A DNA stretch of 63,739 bases, filler included, from Platydemus manokwari (taxonomy: Eukaryota), in NCBI GenBank assembly GCA_037951405.1. It is 5 parts of 5 records of this genome, joined end to end, with 100 filler letters (N's around TTAATTAATTAA, not from the genome) between each part and the next. Parts side by side here need not be neighbours in the genome. Positions count along the whole stretch, not along the records: positions 11,781 to 20,668 come from JBBMOY011334428.1; 4 more parts are not named here. The stretch is one strand, 5' to 3'. The position numbers and the translations under genes are program-made. The notes under the pieces were generated by a model. The model searched no databases. It was not told where the DNA came from and saw only the letters and a list, made by a program, of their open reading frames with translations. How positions within the stretch are numbered: position 1 is the stretch's first letter; each line of letters opens with the position of its first letter. This document shows positions 1,880 to 20,668 of the stretch, in pieces.

Positions 1880-2100
1880 ATTGCATCCATAGATCTTTTA
1901 ATCGTGTGAAATATCTACTCAATTCATATAATTCATATTATTATCTGTGATATGGCCCATTTTGCACGTTCCCTTTTGAATTACTTCGTTTGGAAATTCA
2001 TTGATTTTGAATTACTTTTATGGAATTGATTGGTATTCACCATTTATCAGCCTATAGAACTCAATGTTAGGCATTTGCTATATTAACAATCACGGAAAGA
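1880..2100 (-). mobile_element. Possible Copia-type RNase H relic
   Basis: Broken minus-strand frames give NQFHKS...EVIQKGTCKMGHIT...VDI(F)TR, similar to the Copia HxRxKH...RExVxxGxIxL..I.T...ADIFTK C-terminus. Degenerate. Confidence 0.3.
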
Positions 2101-2321
2101 AAGATTGAAATGAATAACTTTTGTGATACAAATTTAATTACATTACGAATAATGGAAGAAATAGAAAATAAAAATGTGTTTAAATTAAATCTCTAAATAA
2201 TTTCAAATTATTAATAACTATTCAAATCAATTTGTATTCATATTGTTGAGGGTCAAAGATGATAAAGCAATAATCAAAGTCTTATTTAACACTAACATAA
2301 TATTCATCAATAAATAAATGT

Positions 2322-2553
2322 GCCCTTGATTATGAAAGTGTTATAATTCATATATTTCTTGTTTGGAGATATTAAGTGATTTGCATGTTGAAGAATTTAA
2401 AAATATGTGTGTATTATGGAATGAAATATTTTGACAATTAATTAGCGCCGGTAAATCAGCATTTAATATGATTGTGAAATTTATTACCATTTTTAAATGG
2501 AAATTTTGTTTTGAAAAGTTGAAATGACTTATGCCACTTTCATAATCAAGGGC
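2322..2553. repeat. 232-bp segment bounded by 29-bp imperfect inverted repeats (MITE-like)
   Basis: Left arm 2322-2350 is GCCCTTGATTATGAAAGTGTTATAATTCA. The reverse complement of the right arm 2525-2553 is GCCCTTGATTATGAAAGTGGCATAAGTCA; the first 19 nt are identical. No clear target-site duplication. Confidence 0.6.
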
Positions 2554-3973
2554 TCAAATATCACCCTTAGACTTAATATGACAAAGAATTTTAATCATTT
2601 CAGTTTTATAGCCATCAATTTGCATGTTTTTGAGTGAGTGCGTATAATTTTCATTTGTCTTCCTTGTTTCCAAAAAACTTTGAATTTTTAATTTATAATA
2701 ATTGTGATTGATCAGTCAATATGTTTGTACACTTTGATAAGTCTCTGATTCAGTGAAATTAATTTTCTGCTTTAACATTGCCGGATTGGTCCTCACATGT
2801 GTTTGTATGCGTGCAAGTATGTAAAGTATTACTATATTGAATAATCAAAATTAACAGAATGAAAATATAAATTTCCGAAGTCTTTACCTAACTAATATTC
2901 CGTGATATTACTCGATTAGATTTGAATATTTTAATACATTAAGTTTCATGAATATTGAATGTGTTGAAAACTTGATTTAGATTTTTGAAACACTTGGAAA
3001 TAGATGGCAAATTTTCCCTTCAATTCAAGATAAATTACCTCACTCAACAAACAGAAAGATTTACTTGTCAAAAGTAAACTCGTTGAAGTAGACAATTCAT
3101 CAATGTTATCAGCTGATATAGACAGAAACATAATTAATAACAAAACATTCATTAAAGATTCAATGAATATATCGACATACAACTTATCAGAGCTAACGTT
3201 TTCGTAATTTCCTTGGTTTTTAAACCACAAAAAATTGAAATTATATTGTTGGCTTACAAAGTAAATATATCTCAATTGTGAAATTTAATATTTACAGAGT
3301 CAACTGGTTGAGAATCTCTAATTGTTTTTCGCATCACAAGAGGACGTCTATTTTTTTTAATTGATGAACCACAATGTAAATTTTAAAAAATAACAGAAAA
3401 TATTGAACGAAAAATTATATTATAATTATATTATAATTAAACAAAATTGAGTAATAATGTCTGTAATGATAGTGACGATAATAATATTTTTATAATAATA
3501 GTAATAATTATTATAAAATAATAATTATATATAAGATATTATCATTATAAAATAAATTCCATCACAAAATATAGCTTAATATAATAATTATCTAACTAAT
3601 TAAATTTCGAAATTTAAAGGTCTCGTTTATAAAGGCAGAATCAAAAAGAAAACTTTTTCATTAATTTTCAATGTCATTCGAAAATTATATATAACTTTTT
3701 AATTTTTATTTTTTGCTGCTTTTTCCAAAAATTTTTCCAGGGAAATATAATTACAAAAACAACTACTGCGGTATTATGGAATTCAAAAAAAATCCCATTT
3801 CTTTTGATTAGAAACATTTCTGAATATTTAAAAACAATAACAACTCAAATAAATAATAAGTTAATCATTCATTCAAATAATAACTGATAATTAAATGTTA
3901 GTAATAAACAAATTTACTTGAAAACTTTTTAAATGTTGATATTTATTATGATATAAAATAATAATTTATTAAC

Positions 3974-4253
3974 CTCTCGTAAGTAAATGTACGGCCAGTT
4001 TAACCTGAGAAAAATTTCCATTGCCTAAATTCCCTTTAATTCTGTATAAACCAACTCTTTTACCAAGCATGATTTCCTTTTTCACGTTTTCATTGCACTG
4101 CATTTCTTCAGTAAACTTATCGAATACGGTTTCACCATTGCTTTCTTTTTCTCTATATATAAATGTATTAAAATATTTTTCAAAAATGAAATCTAAATAT
4201 TACTCTGATATTTTAGGTAAAATATCAAGTGAATTTCTTCTATTCGTATTCAT
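3974..4253 (-). CDS. NIM1K: NIM1-type Ser/Thr kinase (AMPK-related), first two coding exons; rest not found in window
   Basis: Exon 1 4253-4204 (MNTNRRNSLDILPKISE), 51-nt GT-AG intron 4203-4153, exon 2 4152-3974 (EKESNGETVFDKFTEEMQCNENVKKEIMLGKRVGLYRIKGNLGNGNFSQVKLAVHLLTR), phase-consistent, ending at a GT donor. Matches the NIM1 N-lobe signature EITLGKRIGFYRIRGEIGSGNFSQVKLG. Confidence 0.85.
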
Positions 4254-5099
4254 CAAACAAAAATAAGATCATAACTTATTGAGAAAACCAATTTTAATTT
4301 ATAATGGTAACAAATTTTCAAATGTACTTGATTTAAAATTGGCGTAAGTTACCTTGAAAGATGATAAGAATAATTTGATACAGAAAAACAAATTATAAAA
4401 CTAATTCTAATTATGGTTTGAGAAGCACCTATTACAAATAATCTTTAAATCATTTAATTTCAACAAGATTTGATTGATTGCGTGAGACTAATAACTAACT
4501 AAGTTTTATACGTTGCACGGATTTGATAGCGGCCTAAATTTAAGATAAACAGACTTGTTAATCTTGCATATTTGCTCAATTGAATAGATCTCCGCTAACG
4601 CATTTGCTAATACATCTCTGCAGAAAAGCAAAAATTAAAAATACATTTTAGAATATTACTCTTTAACACCAGCAAAACGTCAATGCGATGCTAATCATTA
4701 TTTTCAGTTGTCACTGATCGATTTACTTCTTTCATAATTACAGTTTAAAAGTAGGTTTAGTTAATTATCAAGTATGAACAAAGAAAGTATAAAGGGCATT
4801 CTATAAAATATTCAGATAAAAATGAAACATTGTGATAAAATAAATGAAAGGCTTTCCTATCATCTCTACTAGAATGCAGAAAATTCACATTAAATAAAAA
4901 TAAAATATTACCTAGATACTAAACTAGAAACCATCAAGGGGTCTTGTAAAGATTCCCAACTTAACAATAATAGACGGAAAACTGAACTTCCATTCTATAG
5001 ACGATATGAAATAGGTAGCCATTATACCATCCAAAATATTAAGGAGGCCAAACGAGAATAGTATTTCTTCTGTTAAGAAACAGATGAATCTCAGAAATC

Positions 5100-7000
5100 A
5101 TCCGAACTATTTACCAGAATGAAGTTACGGTACAGAATTATGACCATCTTTCTACAATGGTTCATTTCAATAAATAAGCAGAAAATGTGACATACCAGAA
5201 ATTTGAACGGTTTATTGCATTCAGGTATTTACGTCATTTGTGTAATCATCAAGATGGTAGTACATAGGACTACTTATCACCTATATGAAGGTTTGGGCCA
5301 TTCCAGGCAATAATAGCTGACGAGGTAATGCAAGAGAAACACAGAGCAAATGCGAAAATAGTCTAACATCTAAATTCTAGTCATCAATCAACCAGACACC
5401 CTCCTATATAGTGGGCACTAAAATCACCGAACATTTCTAATTATGAATCAGGTTATAATTCCGAAATAAAGTTGATAACAAAACCCATTATTCCAAGGGC
5501 ACAACTAGTCTATCAAACTCTTAATCAGGTAGGACAAGGATTAGCACCATCAGAGGAAGCCGCATCTAATCATTATCCACTCGAGGTGTTACAGCAACAT
5601 AAGAAGGAATATTCATTCAGTAACTACTATTCTACACTGTATCGACTCAATTTTTTTGAAGTACACAGAGTATCACTATATGATGTAATGCACAGGGAAT
5701 ACTAACATATTGATTACTATGATGCTCAACTGGCATACAGTTTTTGCCTTAATAGATACTGGAGCAGACTCAACAATTATAACACACGAGTGCTAAATAT
5801 GCATGAATTATAAAAAATGTCGAAAAAATAATAATCACTTTTACAGGAATTAACTGAAGCTCGTTACCGCTATTTGTAGAAATGGATTACAAAATAAAAA
5901 TATCCGGACAAACACTACCAGTCTCTGTCAGACTGTGTAGTTGGAAAAGAAACACTGAGACAACTAAATTGTATCCTTTATTGATATACCAAAGGCATCT
6001 TAGTCAAAGTAACTAGTGATAATCACAAGCGTGGAAATCAAGCTTATATAGACAAAGAAATTACCATTTAACCTCGATCGGAAATAGTCTGCCTTGGAGA
6101 AACAAATCGAGCGAACACTGGGAAAGTGTTATTCGAATCCAGAGTTAGTTTTATGAAACGAACATCCATGCCTGTGAGTCCAAGCATCGCAATAGTAGAA
6201 ATTTAAAATTCACATACGAATAGCCAAAATTTCGGATAAACCAGTGAAATTATACCCATAGACAAATATAGGTGCAGTGACAGAATTTTTAATTGAAGCA
6301 CAGAAAAGACACCTATCAAATACTATGGGCCAATCGAGGATATCACCTTAGTTCAGATATCACCTCTCAGCAGTGTTCACAAATCACTAAATTCCTCAAT
6401 CAATATCTCGATGCTTTTGCGAAACATAAACATGATCTGGGGAAATGTAATTTAATTGAGCACAGAATCGAATTGATTAACCATCAGTCGATATACCAAC
6501 AAACATATCGTACAACTCTTACGTTTGGGTATAATTGGGTAATAGTATTGTTATTTAATGCCACCCTTATTTTCGGAGAATCACTCTTAGAAAAGCGCAA
6601 TTCTTTTACCTAGAATTATTAGAAGATCTAAGGCCACACGAAATTTTTTCCAATTAGCAATTCAACTGTGGAACATCCATCGACACCCTTCTATGGTTAC
6701 CAATTTCGAGAATTTGTAAATGCAGTAAAAAAAACCATTTGGCAGAACGGAAGCGTTCTATTATAATAATATGATTATTATTGCCACTAAGGAACTGAGC
6801 TTGTTCAACCAAATTATAGGGTCAATAAGTGGCTACAATAGAAATTATAATCTATTTATGGTGATTTAGTACTTATTCAATTATACTCGCACATTTTTTA
6901 ATTGGCTTAAAGATGATGTACAAAAAAATCAATTATAGAACTCCTAATGAACATGTCTTCCTAAATCAAAATGAAATTCCGATTTCAACCCATACTGTTC
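5100..7000 (+). mobile_element. Degraded Ty3/Gypsy LTR-retrotransposon pol fragments
   Basis: ORF 6293-6613 contains FLNQYLDAFAKHKHDLGKCNLIEHRIELINHQSIYQQTYR, the typical Gypsy pre-RT segment. About 5290-5325 reads RFGPFQAIIADE, resembling the integrase core. Numerous stops; no LTRs recognised; boundaries approximate. Confidence 0.65.
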
Positions 7001-7759
7001 AACTAATTACCTCTGCATCATCTACTATGGTAACAAATACTACATAGCCCAGATGGCAAATATTAATTCCACTCAGTCATATCAGCCATTACAACCAGAC
7101 GTGTGCAAAAGGATTATAAAGAAGAGGAAGAGAAAACCATGTATCCGAAAAACCGAACCTCATTATAAACTAAAATGAATCCACGAAGAATCTGAATCAA
7201 ATACAGGGATGAAACCCCGAATCCAAGTGACTTGACAAAATTATTAGTTACTTCTGATATGAGACCATAAAAATCAATTAATGATGTCTACAACCATGAT
7301 TCTTAAGAAATACGCCTCTAGAAGAACAACAGAAAAAGAAAGTGAGTTGCGACATGTCTCGGATAACAATGATAAACAATGAGGAGCAAGAGAAGAATTT
7401 CAATTCATTACACATTAATTTGATATTATTTCCTTTCATTATAATTTTTCTGCATTCTTTCCTTTAGATGTTGTATATTCTCTGTATTTTCACATTTTTG
7501 TGTTCATGCATGTATTTTTCTGGGCGACAAAACTTAAAAGAGGGAGAGATGTTGAAATTCATTAGAGCCATCCGAGCCACTAAATATTCACATACAATAG
7601 TTATTAAAAATTCATAAGCAAAATTTAAAAAATTAAAAATTTTCATCAAAAAATAAACATAAAATTTGTTTACTCGCATCAATTATTTCACTGATCTCAA
7701 GGTCTGATTTCACTGATTTCACAGTCTCAACCAAAATTCAATCAACATTTAAATATAGA

Positions 7760-10700
7760 ATGTTAGGATTTATTGTAAATAAACATAACAGTCTTCATGA
7801 CTGAGGCATACAAGTCCTCATGTCTACTTTTAAATTGAATTATTAAGATTGGTGTGTTTGATGTTCTGATTCGAGATTTCTTCATTTGAAGTCTTCACAT
7901 TCGCTTCACAACATTGCCGAGTATGCATTTGTTATACGTTTGTTGTTTTAGCTGCCAGTGCTGGAGAGTTAATAATCGATCTCAACAAATATTCTTTGGT
8001 TTTTCTTTGGTCCGTATGATTCTTGTAAGTTGATAGGCATTTCTGAGCAATGTCGTTATTAGAAATCCCGAGGTAAACGTGATTTGCCTTTTACCGAGTC
8101 CGATATTCGATAGGACCTTGTTGTTATGAGGGTCCCGAGTACGCCGATGCAGATGACATCGAGGTGGATTTCGAATCTCGTTTTCCTGCAGATCTCTTTG
8201 GCAATTGTTTTGTATGTTTTGTGATTGAGGCATCGATGATCCTGGAAGTTGTCGCTCTTATCAAGAGGAATTTTAAGGTCGATGAAGAAGGTTTGTCGTT
8301 TGTTTTTGTTTCGAATCACCAAGTCCGACCGTAGTTAACTCGTAAATCCCGGTTGTGTTGCATCGATGTCTGTGTCGAAGCCTAGTGACTGCGGATAATT
8401 TTCTAAATGATCTAGGATTATCCTGTGACGCTTTAAAGCTAGTTCTAGAACAGCTGAGTAATGGATAAAAATATGAGCAGCGTCAGCAGTGTTGATTTAT
8501 TTGCCTTGATAAAGCACGACGTATAATTGATCAGTAAGAGGTTGTTACGCGCGTGGTGGGTGAATATTCAAACTTCCGGTGATAGATGGAATTTCTTTAA
8601 TGACTTATGAGATAGATGAGATGCGGAAAACAGTGGACCAGCTGTCCTTGTTTTTTCATTGTAAACTAATGGTTGAAGAAAAACATGAATATCCAATCGT
8701 GTAGAATATCTGAGACTTTGCTACGGCTATCTTCTGAGAAAAAAGTATGCCTTGTGACTTTTAGGCGGTGACTTTTAGTTGAATTTTATCATTATTATGA
8801 TTTAATTCACAGCCGATTTGAAGATTTCTGAGTTTTCTGGCAGCAATTCTAGTCATGGTCTACCAAGTTAAGGACGTTGATGCAATTTTGTCCCATATCC
8901 ACAGGAGTGCACATGATAAATCGGTAGCTTCGTTGAGTCTGTACTTGATCAGGCTGATTAAGTGAATTATGACAAATGATCTGAATTGATGGTCTGGAGT
9001 TGTTAGAAATCTCAAGGCATAAACAATCCCCTGGATACAACATTACATGAGTAAGGTAGTTAGGCCGATTTCCAAGAGTTTTCGTGGAGAGTAGAGGAAG
9101 TAATTTTTACAGGTTTTTGAGCCTTACAAATTCAGTATTTTACAAGAGATTGCTCATATCTTTTTGTCCTGCTTTGTTGTCCTCATTAGTGATCAGAGTA
9201 TGAGAATCGAGGTTAGTAGTTTCGACCTGTTGAATTCTGAAAATGTACGAGATCCTTGAGTACAGGAAAGTGCTGTATGCTTAAAACTTTTGAGAATGGT
9301 GCAGTCGAGACTTCGCAATGGCTTTGAAGTCTGATATGATGAATGAAGTATTGATGAATTGAATTGTATGTTGATATTGATATTTGAATTATTGATAGTG
9401 ATATTTGGATTATTGATTATTAGTAATAATAATAATAAATCACTATAATAGGGTAAATAAGTATGCATTGTGTTCCGCACATCCATCAGAGGCCAACATT
9501 GCCTTTTGATTAGGAAAGAGAATCCTTCTATCCATCTGAGAATTTGTAGGTTCAAGATAGTTTAAAAAATCCAGTATCACTTGTCCATGAGAGCTATCGG
9601 GCGCCATAAGGATACAATGTGTAAGGTTGACTATTTTTCTGGTTTAAGGATGAGATTGGTGTTGCATTCTTCCGTTTGGTTTGGTATGATCTTTGTTCGA
9701 AAGATCTTATTGAAGAGAGCCAGTATAAACCATGTTTGGGATTTATAGTTTTTCAATCCTTGTGCGTCATGCCCACTGACTCAGGTGCAACTTTGACAAT
9801 TTTTGGAAGATGTTTGTAATCTTTGCAGTTTTAATTTCTTTAACGTTCGAGTTATCTTCGAGCTGAAGCAGAGTGGGAAAGAATTCTTATGGTGGTGAGG
9901 AAGGAGCTGGAATTGTGAAGTGTATTGTTCAAAAGTTGATAGAGATGTTGGTGTTGAAGAGGGAACACTGTTAGGGCTCACTGAGAAATTTAGTACAAAG
10001 TTTGAAATCTGAAGATGTTTTCCTATTGAAATGCAATACTGAAAATTTGACATGTTTCTTTGGTACAAATTTAGAGGGTTCGGCGATGAACAAGGCTGTT
10101 CTAGTAGTAGATAGTATTTATTCGAGATATGGAGAATCAATCTCCAGCAGTAATAGATGTGTCATTTGGTCTGTAGCTGACTCGCTGATCATTGATCTTT
10201 TGAGGAAGAGTAGAATATTGGCTACAGTCAGAAGTCGTGGAAACACTAAAGCATGGAATGTTATTTGACTTTATTTGCTTTGGGAGTTCTGATATAATGG
10301 ACTGTTGAAATGATAGCATTTTCTTTACTGCCTGCAGATTCTGTAAGAGATTGTCTAACTTTGCCAACAAATATTTTTGTCCATTTATAGGAAGAAGGTG
10401 GCTGGATCGATGTAATATGACTTAGAGTGTACTGCGAAGTAGGGATTCCAATGGTTTCCATTCAAATGAGTAAGCCAAAAGATGACATGATGACAACGTC
10501 TGAAATTGAAAAAAGTGGTAGTGTTTCAAAGTCTTTGTTGATGATAACGATTGCAGGCTGCGGTTTGATGACAACGAGATCAGTGAAATTGGAAAGTTTT
10601 GTAAGGAGATAAGCTTCGATTGCAGGGCTTGATAGTCATTCAGACCGAAAATCTTCGTTGATTAAAGCAATGCTGGTATTTGACTGGTTTGTTTGCATAT

Positions 10701-11780: not shown

Positions 11781-11921
11781 ATGTTTTTGGTGATGTTTTT
11801 TTAGATGATGCTTTTATGGCAAAATTTTTGGGTGTTTCAAATTCTAAATGAGAAGCTAGCCCTCACTCATGTGTAAACGATTACCCTTCTTCTTAGTCGT
11901 TCCCAAAATCCAGTCATAGCT

Positions 11922-14333
11922 ATGCAATTACAACGCACGATGCATCATTACGAGACTCGCTTCGCAGGCCGGAAAGTGCCGTTCTCTGCACAAATGTTGC
12001 CCTACACAACATCCCGAAAAAATAGTTCTCTCAGGGGCAAAAATACGACCTTACCAAGCAAAGTGCCTGCAAGTAAGAGAACTACACCCTATCACTCACA
12101 AGATTCTAATGCTCAAAAGACAGGAGACTTGTTAACAGCTGCCAGTAACCTCGTCAAAGAATGTGTCTCACCTTCCGAAGCAACGTCAGTAAAGACCATG
12201 CAACCAATATCGCCGGATGAGGGAAAACATATCTGCCAAACCTCCAGCAATCATTTGAAGGTTCGAAGCAGTAAAGTCTCAGCCGCAGCTCCACAACAGC
12301 CTGCTGCGCCTCATCTGAACAAGCAAAACAGTGCGCAAGCTCCCCAGCTCTGCGTCAACAACAACGCTCCGAACTGTCCGCCAGCGACGGGGACACAAAC
12401 ACCATCCTCATCAGTGGTACAAGACAGAATAGTTGTTATTAATAAGGACATTTCAAGCGTGGTAGACTCTCCTCATTCTCCAGATTATATGTTCGATAAC
12501 ATTCGCGCACAAACCGATACTGGCAGTAAATTACCCCAGGACGTAAGCTGCGAGAACAAAATAAAATTTCCAGTACAGAGCAATAGAAAAAACACTGTTT
12601 CTTCTTTTAATGGTTACTTGCACCCGCTTCAAATAACAAGCTCTCAAAAAATTCATGAAATTATTCACAATTTGTCTCTAACAGCAGCGTTTTTCAATAA
12701 ATCCCTAAGACAACGTGAGCCTCCTAGCCCGTCGTCGATTTTCTCTACAGTATCAAACATTCAGAACCTAACCGAGCAACTTTTTGCTTTAAATTCACAT
12801 ATAAGTTCTCAAGACCTTGCACCTGTGGTACCTGCTAGTATCTCTTGTGAAGTCGACTCCAATTGTCGAGAACCTTACGATACTTTGCTGCTAGGTGACA
12901 ATATCCTAAGCACGATCAGAAGAAAGGACATCGATCGCTCGTGCTGGATCAAAACAGTTCCATCTGGGCGCTTCGATGACCTTCTCCATACTATAAACTG
13001 CATGCCTAGATTTAAAAATTATATACTAAGTTTTGATGGTCTCTGCCACTCGCCCTCAGACCTTTCTCGAATCAAACAACAAATTGTAAGGAAGTACGCA
13101 CTTTCTCGTATTTATATTGCCAATGCTTGCAGTGCGAAAGAATTCAACAAAGCGATGAATTTTTGCAAAAACCTGGGTTTAAACTTGATTCAATTTCAAA
13201 CTTACCCAGATAATGAAAATGGTGACGCACTCAATAACTTTCAATGGCCTCGGACCCAGGAAGAAAACTTTTGTTTTCTTGGACAACTTGCAATGAAATC
13301 AACATTGCGAATCACCGTGCCATACTGTCCTCGTTTCAACAAATGTCAAGCAATAAATGGAATTGTAGATCATTCCAATGAATCGAAAACTTCACGGAAT
13401 GAGACAAACAGTCTCACTTTAAACTTTGAAAAAGAATATAAGCCTATGCACATCACTGCACATGGTACACCAAATCCTTCAAAATTGATTGCGTCATCAA
13501 GCAGAGCTCTGAGTAACTCACTCACCCACAGCATGAGGAACGTGAATAAGCCTGAGCCTTTCCCTGACTCGATCTCAGACAAATATAATGTCAGTACGAA
13601 AAATAAATTTGGGTTACTTGCAACAGACGCAAATAGTGATTGCGACATGCCCTCCTTTTCAACCAATTCTCAACTTTCCAGTGAGTACGCAGGAACCGAG
13701 GAAAGTCAAGCGAATAACGATATTCAAAACTATTCCAAAGAAAATCAAATTATTCGAAAAAAATCTGATGCCTCTGCCAGGCCTCCATCGAACGACCAAA
13801 CCGATACTGCTACCGCAAAATCAACAGTGAATCAAATTTGCACACGCGTTGCAGACACACTGGACGACCTGAAACGATCGCTCAAAATGGAGCCTGCTTA
13901 CACTTTAGGTGACGGACACTGTCTCCTCCACGCCGTAACGGCGCAGCTGGCTTCACAACAAATATGGAAATGGAATTATACATCTCTGAAAAAAGCCATC
14001 AAAACTGAGAGCTCCAGAAACAGAGATCAGTATGCAAAATTCGTTGACAAGAACAGTGGCAGTTTCGAACAACTCATCGATAAATACATCGATAGAAAAG
14101 TCTTCGATCACGCAGTTGGAGACCTCATACCCCAAATACTTTCTAATGTGACGAGAACACCAATTCACGTATTTGATGAAAGAGACAATGGGATTTGGAA
14201 GACGATAATCTCCCCTATATCAAATGCTCTGATAAACTGTCCTCCGGTAAGCATACACCGGAAACAGGACCACTATAGCGCCCTCTTGAAAATGCGTGAT
14301 GAAAATCGTGCTGCTCCCGCCCCCATTTTGTGA
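11922..14333 (+). CDS. LINE ORF1 protein: low-complexity N-terminus, degenerate SGNH-esterase-like domain, C-terminal OTU cysteine protease domain
   Basis: 803 aa from the first in-frame ATG. TLLLGDNILS...WIKTVPSGRFDDL (GDS-type block, Ser replaced by Asn); VSTKNKFGLL (T.NRF..L-type ORF1 motif); TLGDGHCLLHAV (D664, C667)...VGDLIPQILSN...PIHVF...VSIHRKQDHYSAL (H784), the OTU Cys and His boxes. Confidence 0.88.
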   Translation: MQLQRTMHHYETRFAGRKVPFSAQMLPYTTSRKNSSLRGKNTTLPSKVPASKRTTPYHSQDSNAQKTGDLLTAASNLVKECVSPSEATSVKTMQPISPDEGKHICQTSSNHLKVRSSKVSAAAPQQPAAPHLNKQNSAQAPQLCVNNNAPNCPPATGTQTPSSSVVQDRIVVINKDISSVVDSPHSPDYMFDNIRAQTDTGSKLPQDVSCENKIKFPVQSNRKNTVSSFNGYLHPLQITSSQKIHEIIHNLSLTAAFFNKSLRQREPPSPSSIFSTVSNIQNLTEQLFALNSHISSQDLAPVVPASISCEVDSNCREPYDTLLLGDNILSTIRRKDIDRSCWIKTVPSGRFDDLLHTINCMPRFKNYILSFDGLCHSPSDLSRIKQQIVRKYALSRIYIANACSAKEFNKAMNFCKNLGLNLIQFQTYPDNENGDALNNFQWPRTQEENFCFLGQLAMKSTLRITVPYCPRFNKCQAINGIVDHSNESKTSRNETNSLTLNFEKEYKPMHITAHGTPNPSKLIASSSRALSNSLTHSMRNVNKPEPFPDSISDKYNVSTKNKFGLLATDANSDCDMPSFSTNSQLSSEYAGTEESQANNDIQNYSKENQIIRKKSDASARPPSNDQTDTATAKSTVNQICTRVADTLDDLKRSLKMEPAYTLGDGHCLLHAVTAQLASQQIWKWNYTSLKKAIKTESSRNRDQYAKFVDKNSGSFEQLIDKYIDRKVFDHAVGDLIPQILSNVTRTPIHVFDERDNGIWKTIISPISNALINCPPVSIHRKQDHYSALLKMRDENRAAPAPIL

Positions 14334-17297
14334 CTAAATAACAGTGATCAAATTGAATTTGAAGCTGAAATCACAAACAATGAACGCGGCAATAAAGACC
14401 TAGAGACGAATACTAAATGCCCTGCTAGACCTAAAAAATGCAATAACTCCACTAAAGATCTGCCTATTGAGATAAATAATATCAAAATATTGCACATAAA
14501 TGCTCGCAGTCTCAATGGTAAAATGGATGACGTACGAGTAATGTTGATCACTAACGATATCGATATTCTATGCGTATCTGAAACATGGTTCGATTCACGA
14601 GTCGAAAGCTCATATCTCAGCATTACCGGGTACACATTGTACCGTTATGACGGAGTCAAGAGTAAGAGAGGTAGCGGTTCATGCATTTTCATCAAAGATG
14701 TCTACTCTACATCCTTATTTCCGATAAAAGAAAAATGCGAAGACATAGAAATGGTTTGGCTCAATGTTCAAGTAAACAAACACAAGTCTTTCATTATCGG
14801 CAGTCTTTACAGACATCCGTCAGCATCTCTACGTCCAACATTAAATTTCATTGAAAATACGCTTAAATTAATCTCTGCAGCCAAAAAGTCTTTCTATGTT
14901 TTCGGAGATTTTAACGTAGATCTGACAAATAAAAACAATCAGCTAAGCAAGATGCTGCACAGACTTAATCTTTCTCAAATGGTCCAAGAACCAACGCGAA
15001 TTACCAACACTTCCAAAACTCTTCTTGACCTAGCAATTACAAACAATCCCCAAGCAGTACTCAGCACAGAGATCTTACCGTCCTTTTCTGATCACCATTC
15101 GGTAGAATGCCAAATCAATATCGCAAAAGAGAAACAGAAATCTAGTTACATTACATATCGCATGAAAAACCACTACTCCCCTGAAATATTTCAAGAAAAG
15201 CTATTAGACAGATGGAGTGAATTTCAAGGCATGGAAAACACCGATGATGTCAATCTACAAGTTTCGCTTTTCAACGAAAATTTCGTATCAGCTCTTAACG
15301 AATGCGCACCTTTCACTACGAAGAAAGTTAAGCCAAGAATTTCTAAATGGATAACAGATGAGATAAAACAGTTGAGCAGAGCTAAAAGAAATTTGCAACG
15401 TGAGTACAAACTGAATAAATCAGACAGTACGCGTCGAAAATTATATAAAGATCATGAGAAGATCCTACGAAGAAAAGTTAAGGAAGCAAAACGGGACTAC
15501 TTCCACAAAGAACTCTCGGCGGCAAAACAAAACCCAAAAAGAACTTGGGAAATCATTAGAGAAGTTGCTCAGTATAAAAATTCAGACAGCAAAAGCACTT
15601 TTGACAACCCCTCAAAAATGGCGAATGACTTTAACACTTTCTTCTCAAAAGTTGGCGAAGATGTTTTCAATGAAGTATCCAGGACAGTTTCAGACACATC
15701 TACAGGGGCAAATCTGAGCGATGTTTCATCCCCAAATAGTATAAACAAATGGAGACCAAAGCCGGTTAGCGTCATAGAGATACGAAAAATCTTATTCTCA
15801 CTGAAGAATACTAAAGCGACTGGACATGATGGCATAAGTCTCCAACATATAAAAGACAGCTTCCCTGTCACAGCACCCCTCATTCGCTTGATAATAAATA
15901 CATCTATAGCCACAAACAAGTTTCCCGATCAATGGAAACTATCCATTATTAAGCCATTACATAAATCTGGTGATATCGACATAGCGTCAAACTACAGACC
16001 AATCAGTCTCCTGCCTGTTATGTCCAAAATATTAGAAAAAGTAATAACAAAACAGCTCTCGTTTTACATAGACGAGTCACATCTACTGCATCGCAATCAA
16101 TATGCTTACAGAAGGAATACCAGTACTCAGGACGCCCTGTTAAACATAACAGAAAAAATTTACAATGATATTGACCAAAAAAAATTAACTCTCTTACTAT
16201 TGCTTGATCTCTCCAAAGCTTTCGACAGTGTTGAGCATAAGAAACTTCTACAAAAAATTTCAAACCTCAGAATAGACACTCAGTGGTTTGAAAGCTACCT
16301 ACTAAACCGCTCTCATGCAGTGTGCTTGAATAACAAAATGTCATCATTCATAAAAAATAATTTTGGCGTTCCTCAAGGTTCAATCATCGGCCCGCTCCTA
16401 TTTTCAATTTTCATCAATGATTTCCCCACCATGCCGGCAAACACAAAAATCTCTATGTATGCTGATGACGTACAAATTGCCATGACAAGCTCAACAGCGG
16501 ATTTAAAAGAAACACAAGCCAACGCTGAAAACCTTCTGAGAAATCTGAAATTGTGGTATGACCATAATGGCCTCAAACTTAACGCAAGTAAAACGCAATG
16601 CATTATTTTTGGATCACAGAATGCGACTGAAAATTTACCACCATTCAAGCTAACATTTGGAGACGATACAATTGAACCAGTAGATAAGGTAAAAAATCTG
16701 GGTGTTTGGTTTGACAAAAATATGACTTTCAATTCACACGTCGAAACAATGTGCAACAAAATTAACGGAACCTTAATGTTCTTTCATCGCATTAAGAACA
16801 CACTTGACGAAAAATCTAGATTATTAGTGATTCAGTCTTTAGTTTTATCGCGTCTGGACTACTGCAGTCTTGTGTGGGGAGATTTACCTCAATGTCGTCA
16901 GGAAGAGTTGCAAAAATGTATAAACTTCGCCGCCAAAGTGGTATGCAAAGGAAATTTCAATAAATACGATCATGTCACCCCTCTTTTAAGAAAACTCGAC
17001 TGGATCCCAATACCGAACAGATTCATGATCCAAAAAGCTCGACGAGTATTCTCCTCTCTGTACCTCCCCCAAAGTAATGCAGAGGTGGTAAAATTTTTTC
17101 CATCTAATATCCCAAACAAAAAACCAAATCGGAGGAATGATGTTTTAGTCAGTTACCGTTCATCTAACGTGGGACAAAAAGCTCTCTCAGTTTCTGGAGC
17201 TTTTTTGTGGAACAAGCTTCCTCAGTATATCAAAAACTCTAAAACTGTAAAAGAATTTAGAGTAAATGTGTCACGTCATTTTGCATCTCTGTCATAG
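14334..17297 (+). CDS. LINE ORF2: AP-endonuclease plus reverse transcriptase (open directly from the ORF1 stop; no upstream AUG)
   Basis: APE motifs ILHINARSL, ILCVSETW, YRHP, GDFN, PTR, LDL, SDHH. RT motifs YRPISLL, DLSKAFD, GVPQGS, YADD, KNLGV. C-terminal DHVTPLLRKLDW and LWNKLP are typical of CR1/L2-group elements. The frame is open for 52 codons upstream of the track's TTG start at 14490. Confidence 0.95.
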   Translation, partial: LNNSDQIEFEAEITNNERGNKDLETNTKCPARPKKCNNSTKDLPIEINNIKILHINARSLNGKMDDVRVMLITNDIDILCVSETWFDSRVESSYLSITGYTLYRYDGVKSKRGSGSCIFIKDVYSTSLFPIKEKCEDIEMVWLNVQVNKHKSFIIGSLYRHPSASLRPTLNFIENTLKLISAAKKSFYVFGDFNVDLTNKNNQLSKMLHRLNLSQMVQEPTRITNTSKTLLDLAITNNPQAVLSTEILPSFSDHHSVECQINIAKEKQKSSYITYRMKNHYSPEIFQEKLLDRWSEFQGMENTDDVNLQVSLFNENFVSALNECAPFTTKKVKPRISKWITDEIKQLSRAKRNLQREYKLNKSDSTRRKLYKDHEKILRRKVKEAKRDYFHKELSAAKQNPKRTWEIIREVAQYKNSDSKSTFDNPSKMANDFNTFFSKVGEDVFNEVSRTVSDTSTGANLSDVSSPNSINKWRPKPVSVIEIRKILFSLKNTKATGHDGISLQHIKDSFPVTAPLIRLIINTSIATNKFPDQWKLSIIKPLHKSGDIDIASNYRPISLLPVMSKILEKVITKQLSFYIDESHLLHRNQYAYRRNTSTQDALLNITEKIYNDIDQKKLTLLLLLDLSKAFDSVEHKKLLQKISNLRIDTQWFESYLLNRSHAVCLNNKMSSFIKNNFGVPQGSIIGPLLFSIFINDFPTMPANTKISMYADDVQIAMTSSTADLKETQANAENLLRNLKLWYDHNGLKLNASKTQCIIFGSQNATENLPPFKLTFGDDTIEPVDKVKNLGVWFDKNMTFNSHVETMCNKINGTLMFFHRIKNTLDEKSRLLVIQSLVLSRLDYCSLVWGDLPQCRQEELQKCINFAAKVVCKGNFNKYDHVTPLLRKLDWIPIPNRFMIQKARRVFSSLYLPQSNAEVVKFFPSNIPNKKPNRRNDVLVSYRSSNVGQKALSVSGAFLWNKLPQYIKNSKTVKEFRVNVSRHFASLS

Positions 17298-17844
17298 GGC
17301 CTGCAGCATTTCGGTGTGAATTTCCCATCTACCAGAAATTTTAACTTTCCTGAAATTTCTATTAGAAAATTAGAAACTATTTCATTTTACGTTTGCTAAG
17401 CCATTCGTATATTCATCTTACTTATTTCTGTCGACAATAATGAGCACCACAGCCGTCAGTTCAATGCAGCAGAACGAACGTTCTTTCCATAATTAGGAGT
17501 ATTTCCTCATCTTTATTTTTAATATTTAACGTCCGTATGACAAATATACCATGAAACACATTTTGTGTGTACACCAATATACAGGTTTATAGATGTGAGG
17601 GTTGTGCAAAGTTTTTAATGAATTAAATTTTGGCTAACGTTGTCTCGCTATTTCAAAATCATTCTCGAAGATGTTTTCAATCGATTTTCGGCTGAGCTGG
17701 GGGGAGGGAGTAATTTAAGCATTTCATTTAGTCTTTTTATATTTTTCCGTGCGTTCAGCGCACACTAGCACTGAACTTTCAAACCGAAAAATCTCTAACT
17801 TTCCGTAATTAAAATTATCACTTTGGACCATTGTTTAATCTACC

Positions 17845-19015
17845 TATTTGTGCCAGATTTTGTAAATATTCGCCACTCAGATGTGATATCCGGCCACAAT
17901 GTTACTCCATTTTATCCCATGTACACATGTCCGTATAATGCTGAGGAGTTGTGTTGTTTCTTGACTGTAACCTGAGTTTTCTTAAAAATTTCTATGAAGA
18001 AATTAAAAACCAGTTCATTTTTACGTTTTTCGAAGTCTTCTTTTCCTTTTAGTTATTTTTTTCCGAATAATTTCTTAGGATTACAGTGAGCTCAACTGTC
18101 ATTTTCGGTGTAGTAGATGGTAGGTTGTTTTTATCTTTTTATTTTATATATGTATTTTTTTTTTTTTTTTTCATTAAATTTCATTTTCAATAAGTATATA
18201 TATTAATATGTGTGTGTACGTGTGTAGGTATATATATATCTACATAAATAGATATACATGTTTCTATTTCATTTCTTTACGCAAAAACCATCCGGTTAAT
18301 AAATTTTATTGCACTAGCGAAATGATTCAAAAATAGATCTATCACTTCCCCAGAGGGCGTTTCTGTGAATCGGATTAATGACAAATACAATTAATGAAGT
18401 AAAGCGCAATTTGAGCATATGAATCGTGGTAAAATTATCTTTCTGTCCGTATGTTGTACAAGCTATGAATTTTGATGTTGAGTATATGTTTGTTTACGCA
18501 TTTCTGCCAAAATTTTGTAGATATTTGTCAATCATGAGTGGTAACCGGCTTACACTGTATCTCCATTTTATCCCATGTACCCATGTCCGCATGATGTTGC
18601 AGAGAATATCGAGAAGATATGAAATATGTTTTTTTGTTGTTGTTGTTCCTCGGCGGTAACTTGAGTTTTCTTAAAATTTCTTTTAGGAAATTAAAAAACC
18701 ATTCCATTTATACGTTTTTCGAAGTCCTTTTTCTATTCCTTATCTTTCATCTGGTTATTTCTTCCGATACATCAGAACTTTGGCTGTCATTTTAAATATA
18801 GAAAGAGCAAGATTATTTTTCATGTTTATTAGCATTTTTCTTATATTCATTTTCAATACGTATATATATGAATATGTGTGTTGGTGTGTGCATGAGTGTG
18901 TGTGTGCGCACGCAAACATAAATGTCTATGTATCAGTGTACACATGCACACGTTCGCACATATATATGCGCACATGTACATATATATGTTTCTATTTCTA
19001 CTTTTTGCGTAAAAG
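17845..19015. repeat. Diverged direct repeat pair (about 17845-18290 and 18500-19015)
   Basis: Shared blocks in the same order: CTCCATTTTATCCCATGTAC.CATGTCCG, TGAGTTTTCTTAAAA, TACGTTTTTCGAAGTC, TTCATTTTCAATA, TGTTTCTATTTC. A partial third start is seen near 19120-19150. Confidence 0.8.
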
Positions 19016-19469
19016 GTAAAACCTCAAGGCACATTACATGTTACCCAAAGCTCTGCAATAAAACGCTCGTGTAAAAATTATCTCTATATTTGTATGCCGA
19101 ACAAGCCATGCATTTCATTTTTGAGTGTAAGTTTGTTTATGCATTTCTAGATGTGCGTGCTGTGTTGCTCGATGTTCTTTATAAATTACTTCGTGACTAA
19201 CCTTTTCTCAATACTTGATTGTCATTTACGATGGTGTTTCAATCTGCTCCGGTGTAGCGTTTTTTGTATTTTTCCTACTTCGATAATCTTATAAATAATT
19301 CGAATACAACTAAAGAATTCTTCGAAACTCCCAAGTTCTTGGTTGAAATTGTCGAAGTGGGAAAAAGGCAAGGGACGCTATACCGGAATCTCTTGGAATA
19401 TAAAATATCCAAGAGATGACATTTTTCAGTTCTCATTCAATTACCCTTGACTGAGTTAGACTACGTATA

Positions 19470-19892
19470 TTAGCACGCCACGTATGGTTTGTCTATTAGT
19501 ACGCCTCGTATATTTTTGTCTATTAATATGCCTCGTCTGGTCTATCTATTTGTACACCTCTGATAGTTTGTCTATTAGTACACCTCGTATAATTTGCCTA
19601 TTATTATGCCTCGTATGGCTTATCTATTTGTGCACCTCGAATGGTTTGTCAATTAGTACTCCTTGTATGGAACTTTTGTTAGACTATTAGCACACCACGT
19701 ATGGTTTGTCTATTAGGACGCCTCGTATATTTTGTCTATTAATATGCCTCGTATGGCCTACCTATTTGTACACCTCTGATAGTTTGTCTATTAGTACACC
19801 TCGTATAGTTTGTCTATTATTATGCCTCGTATGGCTTATCTATTTGTACGGATGGTTTGTCAATTAGTACTCCTCGTATGGAACTTTTGTTT
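19470..19892. repeat. Minisatellite of about 26-bp monomers arranged as two 8-monomer higher-order units (period 217 bp)
   Basis: Monomer consensus about TTAGTACACCTCGTATGGTTTGTCTA. The order of monomer variants starting at 19470 recurs starting at 19687. Confidence 0.9.
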
Positions 19893-20204
19893 TAGGACGT
19901 CCTATATTAAGAAACTTTTAAAAGCCAATATGTTGGCATGTATCTCATGTGGCAACTTGGAAATAAATGTTTTTTCTTTTCTTTTTTCTTTCTTTCCGAG
20001 GACCGAGCGGGCAGAAGATGAGAGGCTGAGGCGCCTTCCTTGCTGCTGACCTGCACCACTCACCGTCCACTCGCCTGACTGCGCTTCCTGGCTTCCTGAG
20101 GCTCACGAGTACTTGTGGAGGTTCGTAAACTATAAGTTTAGGACCAAATACTTGCCATGCCGTGAGCTGGGTACTTTGGACGACGTTTCCCCATGAATTC
20201 CTAA

Positions 20205-20277
20205 ACTTATAACTTGCCTTATAACATAATCTTATAACTTGCCTTGTAACATGATCTTATAACTTGCCTTGTAACTT
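20205..20277. repeat. 25-bp tandem repeat, nearly three copies
   Basis: CTTATAACTTGCCTT(A/G)TAACAT(A/G)AT repeated. Confidence 0.85.
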
Positions 20278-20668
20278 CTATTTATAAGTATCAAATGCAC
20301 TGGCTAGGGAAATTATTATTTCCTTCCTGTAGCCTTCAACTATCATAGTTTTCAACCATCAGCTCTATTTCCTCTGTTCACAGATTATTAGTACTTGATT
20401 TTATTATCAACTCCTGATGCAACACTTTTTCTTTTACCTTTACCTTCCCAGACTTTTCCTTCAATTTCTTTTTTACTTTTGGCTTCTATTTTTTTCCTAG
20501 ACTTTTCTTTCAAAGTTAGTGCTCACTGATCTTGACTTTCATTTCCTAAGGAACTTTATTTCAGCATTAGTCTGTCTCTGTTGTTCTCGTCCTTAATTTC
20601 CCAGGGATTGTTCCTTTGGTTTTCGTTCCACAACTTTTTGTCTTCTATTTGTCCTGAATTTTCCCTAG

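What the first reader, a model, noticed from the sequence alone, without database searches (positions are those of the whole stretch)
13887..14290. Apparently catalytically intact OTU cysteine protease/deubiquitinase domain at the end of LINE ORF1
Seen: GDGHCLLHAV (D664, C667) and RKQDHYSAL (H784) with OTU-like spacing and an intervening GDLIPQILSN..PIHVF segment, ending about 15 residues before the ORF1 stop. Established: OTU domains use a DGxC...HY catalytic arrangement, and viral OTUs (nairovirus, arterivirus, tymovirus) act as deubiquitinases, the latter two also cleaving polyproteins. Inference: this OTU could release EN-RT from the readthrough polyprotein, or remove ubiquitin from the ribonucleoprotein particle to counter host degradation. 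I recall OTU domains being noted in some non-LTR families, so the domain alone may not be new; its position beside a leaky stop is the notable part.
Basis: partly seen in the sequence, partly recalled or inferred. Interest (0 to 1): 0.8.

Follow-up and report, generated by a model that had tools for sequence, protein, structure and literature searches.

The report
OTU deubiquitinase domain in LINE ORF1
A young, high-copy LINE retrotransposon (probably in an amphipod crustacean) carries a real, conserved OTU-type deubiquitinase domain at the end of its first protein, and a conserved leaky-looking UGA stop right after it suggests the endonuclease-reverse transcriptase is made by read-through, as in retroviral gag-pol.

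Summary
ORF1 (11922-14333, 803 aa) ends in an OTU domain. Pfam PF02338 scores above its curated cut-off. An AlphaFold model (pLDDT 93.6) matches only OTU deubiquitinases in its top 50 PDB hits. In 50 aligned relatives C667 is kept in 50 and D664 and H784 in 49. One caveat: the usual third catalytic position (His+2) is Ser here, where solved OTUs have Asn or Asp.

This OTU subfamily is carried by transposons, mostly LINEs. It sits either at the ORF1 C-terminus or fused directly as OTU-APE-RT in one ORF. It also occurs in a Penelope-like RT-GIY-YIG protein and a DDE transposase.

The stop is the stronger result. In 9 of 9 diverged OTU-LINEs (OTU identity 26-50%) ORF1 ends in a single TGA followed by C (CTA 4, CAA 4, CAT 1). 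EN-RT continues in the same frame, and in 7 of 9 no Met precedes the conserved endonuclease N-terminus. Two OTU-less sister elements show the same layout with TAG-G. Programmed read-through is therefore the best explanation, and it belongs to the clade rather than to the OTU.

Cutting of the junction by the OTU is not supported: no Gly-Gly occurs in any linker, and 4 of 9 linkers have no Gly at all. A deubiquitinase role is favoured but untested.

The parts
11922..14333 (+). LINE ORF1 (803 aa). It has a low-complexity N-terminal third, an esterase-like middle domain, a low-complexity linker and a C-terminal OTU domain.
   Evidence: ORF listing; Pfam; blastp of ORF1 against the ORF1s of related elements.
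12876..13193 (+). Esterase-like (SGNH-like) alpha/beta domain of ORF1 (about residues 319-424), with the motif LLLGDNIL. The nucleophile position is Asn here and is not conserved among relatives.
   Evidence: Conserved in 8 ORF1s. The AF2 core has pLDDT 82-96. Foldseek hits are mostly SGNH/GDSL hydrolases, including the ZfL2-1 ORF1 esterase 4c1b at E 1.4e-3, but TM is only 0.26-0.5. The Atlas feature score is 0.89 for GDSL lipase, a lead only. Pfam gave no hit.
13842..14291 (+). OTU cysteine isopeptidase domain (ORF1 residues about 641-790).
   Evidence: Pfam PF02338 above its cut-off; AF2 pLDDT 93.6; Foldseek top 50 all OTU; profile against PDB finds vOTU, Otu2, OTUD5 and OTUD3.
13911..13922 (+). 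Cys box D664-G665-H666-C667. The nucleophile Cys sits at the N-terminus of a helix.
   Evidence: Conservation in 50 sequences: D 49, G 50, H 48, C 50. Helix 28-39 of the model starts at C667.
14271..14279 (+). His box H784-Y785-S786. The general-base His is followed by Ser at the usual third-residue position.
   Evidence: H in 49 of 50; Y/F in 50 of 50; the +2 position is S 22, N 20, D 5, E 2, K 1. It aligns to HYD/HYN of solved OTUs.
14331..14339 (+). Single in-frame stop and its context, TGA CTA AAT (a UGA-CUA read-through-type context).
   Evidence: Sequence. TGA followed by C is conserved in 9 of 9 OTU-LINEs. UGA-CUA is listed as the type II read-through motif of Sindbis, ONNV and PSIV (PMC13517186). 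UGA-CUAG is the motif of human read-through genes.
14334..14492 (+). Open, in-frame linker of 53 codons between the stop and the endonuclease N-terminal motif. It holds no ATG and no stop.
   Evidence: Translation; script. The first Met is at codon 63 after the stop, beyond the HINARSL motif at codon 53.
14334..17297 (+). ORF2 reading frame (APE endonuclease plus reverse transcriptase). It is open from the codon after the TGA.
   Evidence: Pfam Exo_endo_phos covers about 14499-15095 and RVT_1 about 15963-16709. Amphipod relatives are 63-71% identical.
17298..17540 (+). Start of the 3' UTR. The true 3' end of the element was not determined.
   Evidence: No alignable 3' UTR in the Trinorchestia copy and no clear target-site duplication. 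A weakly similar second tail-like segment lies at about 17975-18170.

Best explanation
The piece holds a full-length, recently active APE-type LINE. Its ORF1 protein ends in a genuine OTU-family cysteine isopeptidase domain that is a conserved, selected module of a whole group of LINEs.

Shown: the fold, the conserved Cys and His boxes, and the domain's recurrence next to APE-RT in many diverged elements.

Inferred about expression: ORF2 (EN-RT) has no start codon of its own before the endonuclease's first conserved motif. It is made when a fraction of ribosomes read through the single UGA (context UGA-CUA). This gives a roughly 1,790-residue ORF1p-OTU-EN-RT fusion beside abundant ORF1p-OTU. 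As in retroviral Gag/Gag-Pol and alphavirus nsP3/nsP4, this would set the ratio of the two proteins and tether the polymerase to the ORF1p particle.

Inferred about function: the OTU acts as a deubiquitinase (or a related ubiquitin-like deconjugase) on the particle or on host factors. It would protect the particle from ubiquitin-dependent restriction or degradation, or modulate ubiquitin signalling at the integration site. It is unlikely to act as a protease that cuts the ORF1-ORF2 junction.
For: OTU identity: Pfam 28.2 bits against a cut-off of 23.3; best PDB sequence hit VCPIP1 at E 5e-5; AF2 pLDDT 93.6; Foldseek top 50 all OTU DUBs, TM up to 0.69; profile hits to vOTU, Otu2, OTUD5 and OTUD3.

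Conservation: C667 50 of 50, D664 49 of 50, H784 49 of 50.

Link to LINEs: of 37 long relatives, 17 carry APE and 10 carry RT in the same protein. Eight were examined and have RT, with APE in seven, downstream of an N-terminal OTU as placed; Pfam itself scores the OTU in only two of them, below its cut-off. Two are confirmed as uninterrupted ORFs under the standard code.

Read-through: 9 of 9 OTU-LINE junctions have one TGA, C at +4 (CTA 4, CAA 4, CAT 1) and the same frame. This holds although OTU identity is only 26-50% and linker length varies from 19 to 60 codons. In 7 of 9 the first Met lies after the HINARSL-type endonuclease motif. In the window the Pfam APE match starts at profile position 4, before the first ATG. 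Two OTU-less sisters are also in frame, with TAG-G. UGA-CUA and stop-CAA-type contexts are known read-through motifs.

Activity of the family: thousands of contig pieces, many at least 99% identical, with a 5'-truncation depth gradient, in runs labelled with at least 4 coded organisms.

DUB rather than processing: no Gly-Gly in 9 linkers and no Gly at all in 4. The same OTU subfamily is fused to a DDE_1 transposase and to an RT-GIY-YIG protein. OTU domains are also known in Helentrons and Ginger1 transposases (PMC4067079, PMC2836005).
Against: No biochemical or expression data exist: no listed sequencing run that holds the element is on record as RNA.

The third catalytic position is Ser786, not Asn or Asp, so activity could be weak or altered.

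No stimulatory RNA structure was found after the stop (z -0.6 in the window; -0.6 to +1.35 in four relatives), so read-through efficiency would rest on local context alone.

LINE ORF2 can be translated without read-through. L1 uses AUG-independent termination-reinitiation and SART1 uses UAAUG coupling (PMC5972666).

The nine elements share ancestry, so they are not strictly independent samples.

Some decayed copies have lost catalytic residues (P0065, P0067, P0068), as expected for dead copies.
Confidence: 0.6

Rival explanations
1. The OTU is a processing protease. After read-through it cuts the ORF1p-OTU-EN-RT polyprotein to free EN-RT, as arterivirus PLP2 or tymovirus PRO do.
For: The OTU sits exactly at the hinge of the putative fusion. 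Related elements have OTU-linker-APE-RT in one ORF. Viral OTU-like proteases with a dual DUB and processing role exist (established knowledge; also suggested for Helentrons in PMC4067079).
Against: No Gly-Gly occurs in any of 9 linkers, and 4 of 9 linkers have no glycine between the His box and the endonuclease. The linkers are not alignable and carry no conserved motif. The same OTU subfamily occurs in single-function transposase proteins.
Confidence: 0.15
2. There is no programmed read-through. ORF2 is translated by termination-reinitiation or non-AUG initiation as in L1 or SART1, and the OTU exists only in ORF1p.
For: These are the known mechanisms for LINE ORF2 (PMC5972666). Human L1 ORF2 translation does not need its AUG (my own knowledge, Alisch et al. 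2006). No RNA structure was found after the stop. Two of nine elements do have a Met shortly after the stop.
Against: Reinitiation gives no reason to keep the same frame in 11 of 11 elements despite linker indels. It also gives no reason to keep a single stop that is always TGA followed by C in OTU elements and TAG-G in the sister elements.
Confidence: 0.2
3. The OTU is a catalytically dead or merely ubiquitin-binding module, because the third triad residue is Ser.
For: Ser786 stands where solved OTUs have Asn or Asp. The neighbouring esterase-like domain of the same ORF1 has clearly lost a conserved nucleophile, so pseudo-enzyme domains do occur in this protein.
Against: Cys and His are nearly invariant across 50 diverged relatives, as are D664 and G665 of the oxyanion loop. 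That pattern is not expected of a pure binding module. Ser, Asn, Asp and Glu at +2 are all polar residues able to orient His. Some OTUs work as Cys-His dyads (my own knowledge).
Confidence: 0.1
4. The UGA is recoded as selenocysteine.
For: In-frame UGA recoding has been reported in some Penelope-like elements (my own memory, not checked here).
Against: Rfam found no SECIS in 11781-20668 even at E<=1. Sister elements use TAG at the same place.
Confidence: 0.02

Closest known systems
Cellular OTU deubiquitinases (Pfam PF02338; OTUD3, OTUD1, OTUD5/DUBA, Otu2, VCPIP1)
   Same: The fold is the same (Foldseek E 4e-6 to 1e-4, TM 0.6-0.77). The D-G-x-C Cys box lies at a helix N-terminus and the H-Y His box on a strand. 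The Cys box is nearly identical to that of VCPIP1.
   Different: It is embedded at the C-terminus of a LINE ORF1 protein. Sequence identity is only 13-18%. The His+2 residue is Ser, not Asn or Asp.
Viral OTU proteases (nairovirus L-protein vOTU; arterivirus PLP2; tymovirus PRO)
   Same: An OTU domain is carried inside the large protein of a selfish replicon. vOTUs are among the best structural and profile hits. A counter-defence DUB role is the working model.
   Different: This is a retrotransposon, not a virus. No Gly-Gly processing site lies at the junction. The domain lies upstream of a stop codon.
Transposon-borne OTU domains: Helentrons and Ginger1 transposases, and OTU/Josephin DUBs at the N-terminus of some ORF2p
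   Same: An OTU has been recruited by mobile elements, with catalytic residues kept (PMC4067079 and PMC2836005). A 2026 preprint notes DUB domains on some LINE ORF2p (PMC13405545). My search finds OTU-APE-RT ORFs, a DDE_1 transposase with OTU and an RT-OTU-GIY-YIG protein in the same subfamily.
   Different: Here the OTU is the last domain of ORF1p and is separated from EN-RT by a conserved UGA. I found no paper describing that arrangement.
Programmed stop-codon read-through in gammaretrovirus gag-pol (UAG-G) and alphavirus nsP3/nsP4 (UGA-CUA)
   Same: A single in-frame stop lies between an abundant upstream protein and the polymerase. The hexanucleotide matches Sindbis, ONNV and PSIV (UGA CUA) or is of the TMV type (stop-CAA), and the sister elements use UAG-G.
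   Different: The element is a non-LTR retrotransposon. No downstream stem-loop or pseudoknot was detected. Nothing has been shown experimentally.
Esterase-type ORF1p of CR1/L2-group LINEs (zebrafish ZfL2-1, PDB 4c1b)
   Same: The middle domain of ORF1 has a GD-x block-I-like motif and a weak SGNH-like fold match that includes 4c1b. The OTU-less sisters L018 and L019 have a recognisable GDSL domain plus a coiled coil.
   Different: The nucleophile Ser is replaced (Asn in the window) and is not conserved. Pfam does not recognise the domain. An OTU is appended.
LINE ORF2 translation by termination-reinitiation (human L1, Bombyx SART1)
   Same: The RNA is bicistronic, with ORF1 before ORF2 and a short spacer (PMC5972666).
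   Different: Here the frame, the single stop, the stop identity and the +4 base are all conserved, and there is usually no AUG. Reinitiation does not predict this.

Membership tests
OTU cysteine protease / deubiquitinase family (PF02338) | Profile match above the curated threshold | tested here: met
   28.2 bits against a cut-off of 23.3, E 2.9e-6, residues 663-760.
OTU cysteine protease / deubiquitinase family (PF02338) | OTU fold | tested here: met
   AF2 pLDDT 93.6. The Foldseek top 50 are all OTU domains, best OTUD3 at E 4.4e-6 with TM 0.67/0.77.
OTU cysteine protease / deubiquitinase family (PF02338) | Catalytic Cys in a D-G-x-C box and catalytic His in an H-aromatic box | tested here: met
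   D664, G665, H666, C667 and H784, Y785 are present in the window. They are conserved in 49-50 of 50 relatives and align to the catalytic boxes of solved OTUs.
OTU cysteine protease / deubiquitinase family (PF02338) | Third catalytic residue (Asp or Asn two residues after His) | tested here: inconclusive
   The window has Ser786. Relatives have S 22, N 20, D 5, E 2. Solved OTUs aligned here have D or N. This bears on activity, not on fold membership.
OTU cysteine protease / deubiquitinase family (PF02338) | Ubiquitin or ubiquitin-like isopeptidase activity | not testable with these tools
   This needs a Ub-AMC, di-ubiquitin or activity-probe assay.
APE-type non-LTR retrotransposon (LINE) | APE endonuclease followed by reverse transcriptase in one ORF | tested here: met
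   Exo_endo_phos E 6e-9 and RVT_1 E 9.4e-38.
APE-type non-LTR retrotransposon (LINE) | Multi-copy family with 5'-truncated copies | tested here: met
   17,017 contig pieces in run X2. Summed depth rises from about 8e3 at the 5' end to about 5e5 near the 3' end.
APE-type non-LTR retrotransposon (LINE) | Defined 3' tail and target-site duplication; RT-based clade | tested here: inconclusive
   The 3' UTR is not alignable to the Trinorchestia copy and no convincing flanking direct repeat was found. No reference RT set was available for clade assignment.
Programmed stop-codon read-through | Downstream ORF in the same frame after a single stop, kept across diverged relatives | tested here: met
   9 of 9 OTU-LINEs plus 2 of 2 OTU-less sisters.
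Programmed stop-codon read-through | Leaky stop context (UGA followed by C; CUA or CAA next codon) | tested here: met
   TGA in 9 of 9 and +4 C in 9 of 9: CTA 4, CAA 4, CAT 1. The motifs are as listed in PMC13517186 and PMC4132726.
Programmed stop-codon read-through | Stimulatory downstream RNA structure (needed for type III, optional for types I and II) | tested here: not met
   z-scores from -0.64 to +1.35 for the window and four relatives.
Programmed stop-codon read-through | Read-through product observed | not testable with these tools
   No listed run that holds the element is on record as RNA. This needs a reporter assay, ribosome profiling or proteomics.
Viral-type OTU processing protease (arterivirus PLP2 / tymovirus PRO-like) | Gly-Gly or Gly-small cleavage site at the junction to be processed | tested here: not met
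   No GG in 9 of 9 linkers, and 4 of 9 linkers have no Gly.
SGNH/GDSL esterase domain of CR1/L2-type ORF1p | SGNH fold with a block-I GDS nucleophile | tested here: not met
   The fold match is weak (TM 0.26-0.5, E about 1e-3). The nucleophile position is N, N, S, D, C, H, I, I in 8 elements.
Selenocysteine recoding | SECIS element | tested here: not met
   No Rfam SECIS hit at E<=1.

The most novel reading that the evidence does not exclude
A whole clade of invertebrate LINEs expresses its endonuclease-reverse transcriptase by gag-pol-like programmed stop-codon read-through. OTU-bearing members use UGA-CUA or UGA-CAA, and sister elements use UAG-G. In the OTU-bearing members this yields an ORF1p-deubiquitinase-EN-RT fusion, so the retrotransposition particle carries its own deubiquitinase. 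I found neither read-through as a LINE ORF2 strategy nor an ORF1-terminal OTU described in the searchable literature.
Probability: 0.45. Interest if true: 0.8.

Novelty: new variant of a known kind. Interest (0 to 1): 0.66.

Why it matters
How LINEs translate ORF2 from a bicistronic RNA, and how they fix the large ORF1p:ORF2p ratio, is understood for only a few elements: reinitiation in L1 and SART1, and 2A peptides in some others. A clade whose frame, single stop and leaky context are conserved across deep divergence would add retrovirus-like and alphavirus-like read-through to that list. It can be tested directly with a short reporter.

A conserved deubiquitinase built into ORF1p, and into the fusion, would mean these elements actively edit ubiquitin marks. 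That bears on ubiquitin-dependent restriction of retroelements. It would also link LINEs to the same solution reached by nairoviruses and arteriviruses, and to the OTU domains carried by Helentrons and Ginger transposons.

Tried and rejected
- **Word-index search.** The search with ORF1 residues 620-803 found nothing. This was an effect of the length window, because the exhaustive search then found 286 relatives.
- **Metagenome scan.** The narrow alignment A4 gave only 6 loci, one of them a new LINE junction, L012.
- **RNA structure after the stop.** None was found in the window or in four relatives.
- **Selenocysteine.** No SECIS was found, and no tRNA genes.
- **Ends of the element.** The 3' end and target-site duplication could not be set.
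- **RT clade.** I could not assign one for lack of reference sequences. I call the element CR1/L2-like only through the esterase-type ORF1 lead.
- **Reads.** Only Logan contigs were available. They show abundance, a 5'-truncation gradient and a 768-nt contig from another coded organism that spans the OTU, the stop and the linker with 23 mismatches and no gaps. They cannot show expression or per-codon conservation. The printed variant list holds no change at the Cys, His or stop codons, but 695 rows were not shown.
- **OTU-ubiquitin complex.** I did not run a prediction, because no ubiquitin sequence was available from an allowed source.
- **Literature.** Ten searches found OTU domains in Helentrons, Ginger1 and a few ORF2p N-termini. 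None described an ORF1-terminal OTU or LINE read-through. The library lacks most subscription papers and Repbase Reports, so absence there is weak evidence.
- **Nonsense mutation in one copy.** Rejected, because the stop is conserved in 9 diverged elements.
Full report
**What is in the piece.** Between 11781 and 20668 the + strand carries a full-length non-LTR retrotransposon.
- ORF1 runs 11922-14333 (803 aa). An open frame with an APE endonuclease and a reverse transcriptase runs to 17297 (Pfam Exo_endo_phos E 6e-9, RVT_1 E 9.4e-38).
- ORF1 and ORF2 are in the same frame and are separated by one stop, TGA at 14331-14333, followed by CTA AAT.
- The closest named ORF2 relatives come from the amphipod Trinorchestia longiramus at 63-71% identity. 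The host is therefore probably an amphipod crustacean, although the runs that hold the element are coded.
- The family is very abundant and young. One run gave 17,017 contig pieces, 5,670 of them at least 99% alike. Summed depth rises about 50-fold from the 5' to the 3' end, as expected of 5'-truncated LINE copies. The family occurs in runs labelled with at least four different coded organisms.

**The observation.**
- Pfam's OTU model matches residues 663-760 at 28.2 bits, above its curated cut-off of 23.3.
- The best solved-structure sequence match is the OTU of VCPIP1, which shares almost the same Cys box (E 5e-5).
- An exhaustive HMMER search with residues 620-803 found 286 relatives at E<=1e-3.
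- In a 50-sequence alignment G665 and C667 are invariant, D664 and H784 are present in 49, and H666 in 48.
- AlphaFold2 on this alignment gives mean pLDDT 93.6. C667 sits at the N-terminus of a helix and H784 at the start of a strand.
- All of Foldseek's top 50 PDB matches are OTU enzymes: OTUD3, OTUD1, OTUD5/DUBA, nairovirus vOTUs, a Wolbachia OTU, yeast Otu2, A20 and Cezanne. A profile search of PDB sequences agrees.

The OTU fold and the Cys and His boxes are therefore real and conserved. One caveat stands. In the solved OTUs aligned the residue two after the His is Asp or Asn. The window has Ser786, and relatives have S 22, N 20, D 5, E 2. 'Catalytically intact' is likely but not certain.

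**Where this OTU subfamily lives.** I scanned 37 long relatives against Pfam. Seventeen carry an APE domain and 10 an RT in the same protein.
- Eight examined one by one have RT, and seven also APE, downstream of an N-terminal OTU placed by the search; Pfam itself scores the OTU in only two of them, below its cut-off. For two of them I confirmed an uninterrupted ORF under the standard code, with a separate ORF1 upstream in another frame.
- Others have the OTU at the C-terminus of a long ORF1-like protein, as here.
- The same subfamily also appears between the RT and GIY-YIG domains of a Penelope-like protein, after a DDE_1 transposase, and after a GDSL esterase.
- The APE-RT part of one OTU-APE-RT protein is 28% identical to the window's ORF2 over its full length (E 5e-92).

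So the OTU is a mobile-element module whose main home is LINEs, always next to EN-RT.

**The stop codon.** I collected every related element for which the OTU and the start of ORF2 lie on one contig. These are the window, L002, L003, L004 (L005 is the same family), L006, L007, L008, L009 and L012.
- They are deeply diverged: OTU identity is 26-50% and endonuclease identity 27-71%.
- The distance from the His box to the stop varies from 10 to 82 codons, and from the stop to the endonuclease motif from 19 to 60 codons. The linkers cannot be aligned.
- Yet in 9 of 9 ORF1 ends in a single TGA, the next base is C (CTA in four, CAA in four, CAT in one), and the frame runs on without a further stop into the endonuclease.
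- In 7 of 9 the first Met after the stop lies beyond the conserved HINARSL-type motif. In L007 and L008 it lies 155 and 117 codons downstream, deep inside the domain.
- In the window the Pfam endonuclease match begins at profile position 4, upstream of the first ATG. From established knowledge of APE-type endonucleases, this first strand holds the metal-binding Asn (N14 in L1 EN), so a Met-initiated product would lack it.
- Two sister LINEs chosen by ORF2 similarity alone (L018 and L019, 37-38% identity) have no OTU. Their ORF1 has a coiled coil, a GDSL esterase and CCHC knuckles. They show the same layout with TAG followed by G.

That makes 11 of 11 in frame. If frames were free and the lineages independent, the other ten would agree by chance at about (1/3)^10, or 2e-5. 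Shared ancestry weakens this figure, but the variable linker lengths show that indels occurred and the frame was kept.

UGA-CUA is the type II read-through context of Sindbis, ONNV and PSIV. Stop-CAA-type contexts derive from the TMV motif and also work with UGA (PMC13517186). UGA-CUAG, which L003 and L009 have exactly, is the motif of validated human read-through genes.

I found no significant RNA structure after the stop and no SECIS element.

Programmed read-through is therefore the best explanation of how EN-RT is made. It is a property of the clade, not of the OTU. The rival is L1/SART1-like reinitiation (PMC5972666), which does not predict conservation of frame, stop identity or the +4 base.

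**What the OTU does.** With read-through, the OTU is present in every ORF1p molecule and also forms the hinge of a rare ORF1p-OTU-EN-RT fusion of about 1,790 residues.

It meets a direct obstacle. OTU enzymes, including the viral processing ones, cleave after Gly (Gly-Gly or Gly-small), which is established knowledge. None of the nine linkers has a Gly-Gly, and four (L002, L006, L007, L008) have no glycine at all between the His box and the endonuclease. The same OTU subfamily is also attached to a DDE transposase and sits inside a Penelope-like protein, where there is no such junction. OTU domains with intact catalytic residues are likewise known in Helentrons and Ginger1 transposases (PMC4067079 and PMC2836005).

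The common denominator is a role directed at the host or at the particle. I therefore favour a deubiquitinase (or a ubiquitin-like deconjugase) that protects the ribonucleoprotein or edits ubiquitin signalling at the integration or repair step. This is an inference; nothing here tests activity or substrate.

**Other anatomy.** The middle of ORF1 (about residues 319-424) is conserved in eight elements. It begins with a block-I-like T-L-L-x-G-D-x motif.
- The AF2 core has pLDDT 82-96.
- Foldseek returns mostly SGNH/GDSL hydrolases, including the ZfL2-1 ORF1 esterase 4c1b, but only at E about 1e-3 and TM 0.26-0.5.
- The nucleophile position is N, N, S, D, C, H, I, I across the eight.

The domain looks like a degenerate, probably non-catalytic descendant of the CR1/L2-type ORF1 esterase (PMC3905857). 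I could not assign the RT clade or the 3' end.

**Novelty.** OTU domains in transposons are known, and a 2026 preprint notes OTU and Josephin domains at the N-terminus of some ORF2p (PMC13405545). Ten searches found no description of an ORF1-terminal OTU in LINEs, nor of stop-codon read-through as a LINE ORF2 strategy. Reviews of recoding and reinitiation mention only frameshifting, 2A peptides and reinitiation for non-LTR elements. The library omits most subscription journals and Repbase Reports, so I rate this a new variant of a known kind rather than categorically new.

**Verdict.** The most valuable outcome is the comparative case for read-through, which a short reporter experiment can settle.

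Noticed in passing
window 12876-13193 (ORF1 residues about 319-424): A conserved esterase-like domain whose GD-x nucleophile position is Asn here and varies among eight related ORF1s (N, N, S, D, C, H, I, I). It is probably a non-catalytic remnant of the CR1/L2-type ORF1 esterase. The structural match to SGNH hydrolases, including ZfL2-1 4c1b, is weak.
   Followed up: partly
L018 220-5022 and L019 580-4947: Sister LINEs (ORF2 37-38% identical) lack the OTU. Their ORF1 has a coiled coil, a GDSL esterase and CCHC knuckles, yet they have the same single in-frame stop before EN-RT. The stop here is TAG followed by G, and no Met precedes the endonuclease motif. The read-through layout therefore predates or is independent of the OTU.
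   Followed up: partly
P0088 (975 aa), P0208 (747 aa), P0213 (630 aa): The same OTU subfamily occurs between the RT and GIY-YIG domains of a Penelope-like protein, after a DDE_1/HTH_psq (pogo-like) transposase, and after a recognisable GDSL esterase.
   Followed up: no
L010 1375-5364 and L011 385-4545: These LINEs have the OTU at the N-terminus of a continuous OTU-APE-RT ORF2, with ORF1 upstream in a different frame. The position of the ORF boundary relative to the OTU therefore differs between lineages.
   Followed up: partly
L001 (Trinorchestia longiramus VCRD01001598.1) 1900-7870; P0065, P0067, P0068: These are decayed copies of the closest named family. L001 has frameshifts. The three representative proteins have lost catalytic residues (Asp to Gly with His to Arg in P0067, Gly to Arg in the Cys box of P0068, His to Asn in P0065), as expected for dead copies. 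The L001 copy keeps GDS in the esterase-like motif where the window has GDN.
   Followed up: partly
window 19468-19891: A tandem array of a 26-bp unit (about 16 copies, 69% matches) with a 216-bp higher-order period (2 copies, 92%). It lies downstream of the LINE and its function is unknown.
   Followed up: no
window 17340-17530 and 17975-18171: Two weakly similar segments (a 36-nt core at 83% identity, 633 bp apart), the second ending in a run of 17 T. This may be a second short 3'-tail fragment of the same LINE family or an internal 3' UTR duplication. The true 3' end of the element was not set.
   Followed up: partly
window 18200-18270 and 18860-18990: TG/TA-rich microsatellite stretches give sub-threshold Rfam miRNA matches (22-38 bits against gathering scores of 80-101). 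I take these to be low-complexity artefacts.
   Followed up: no
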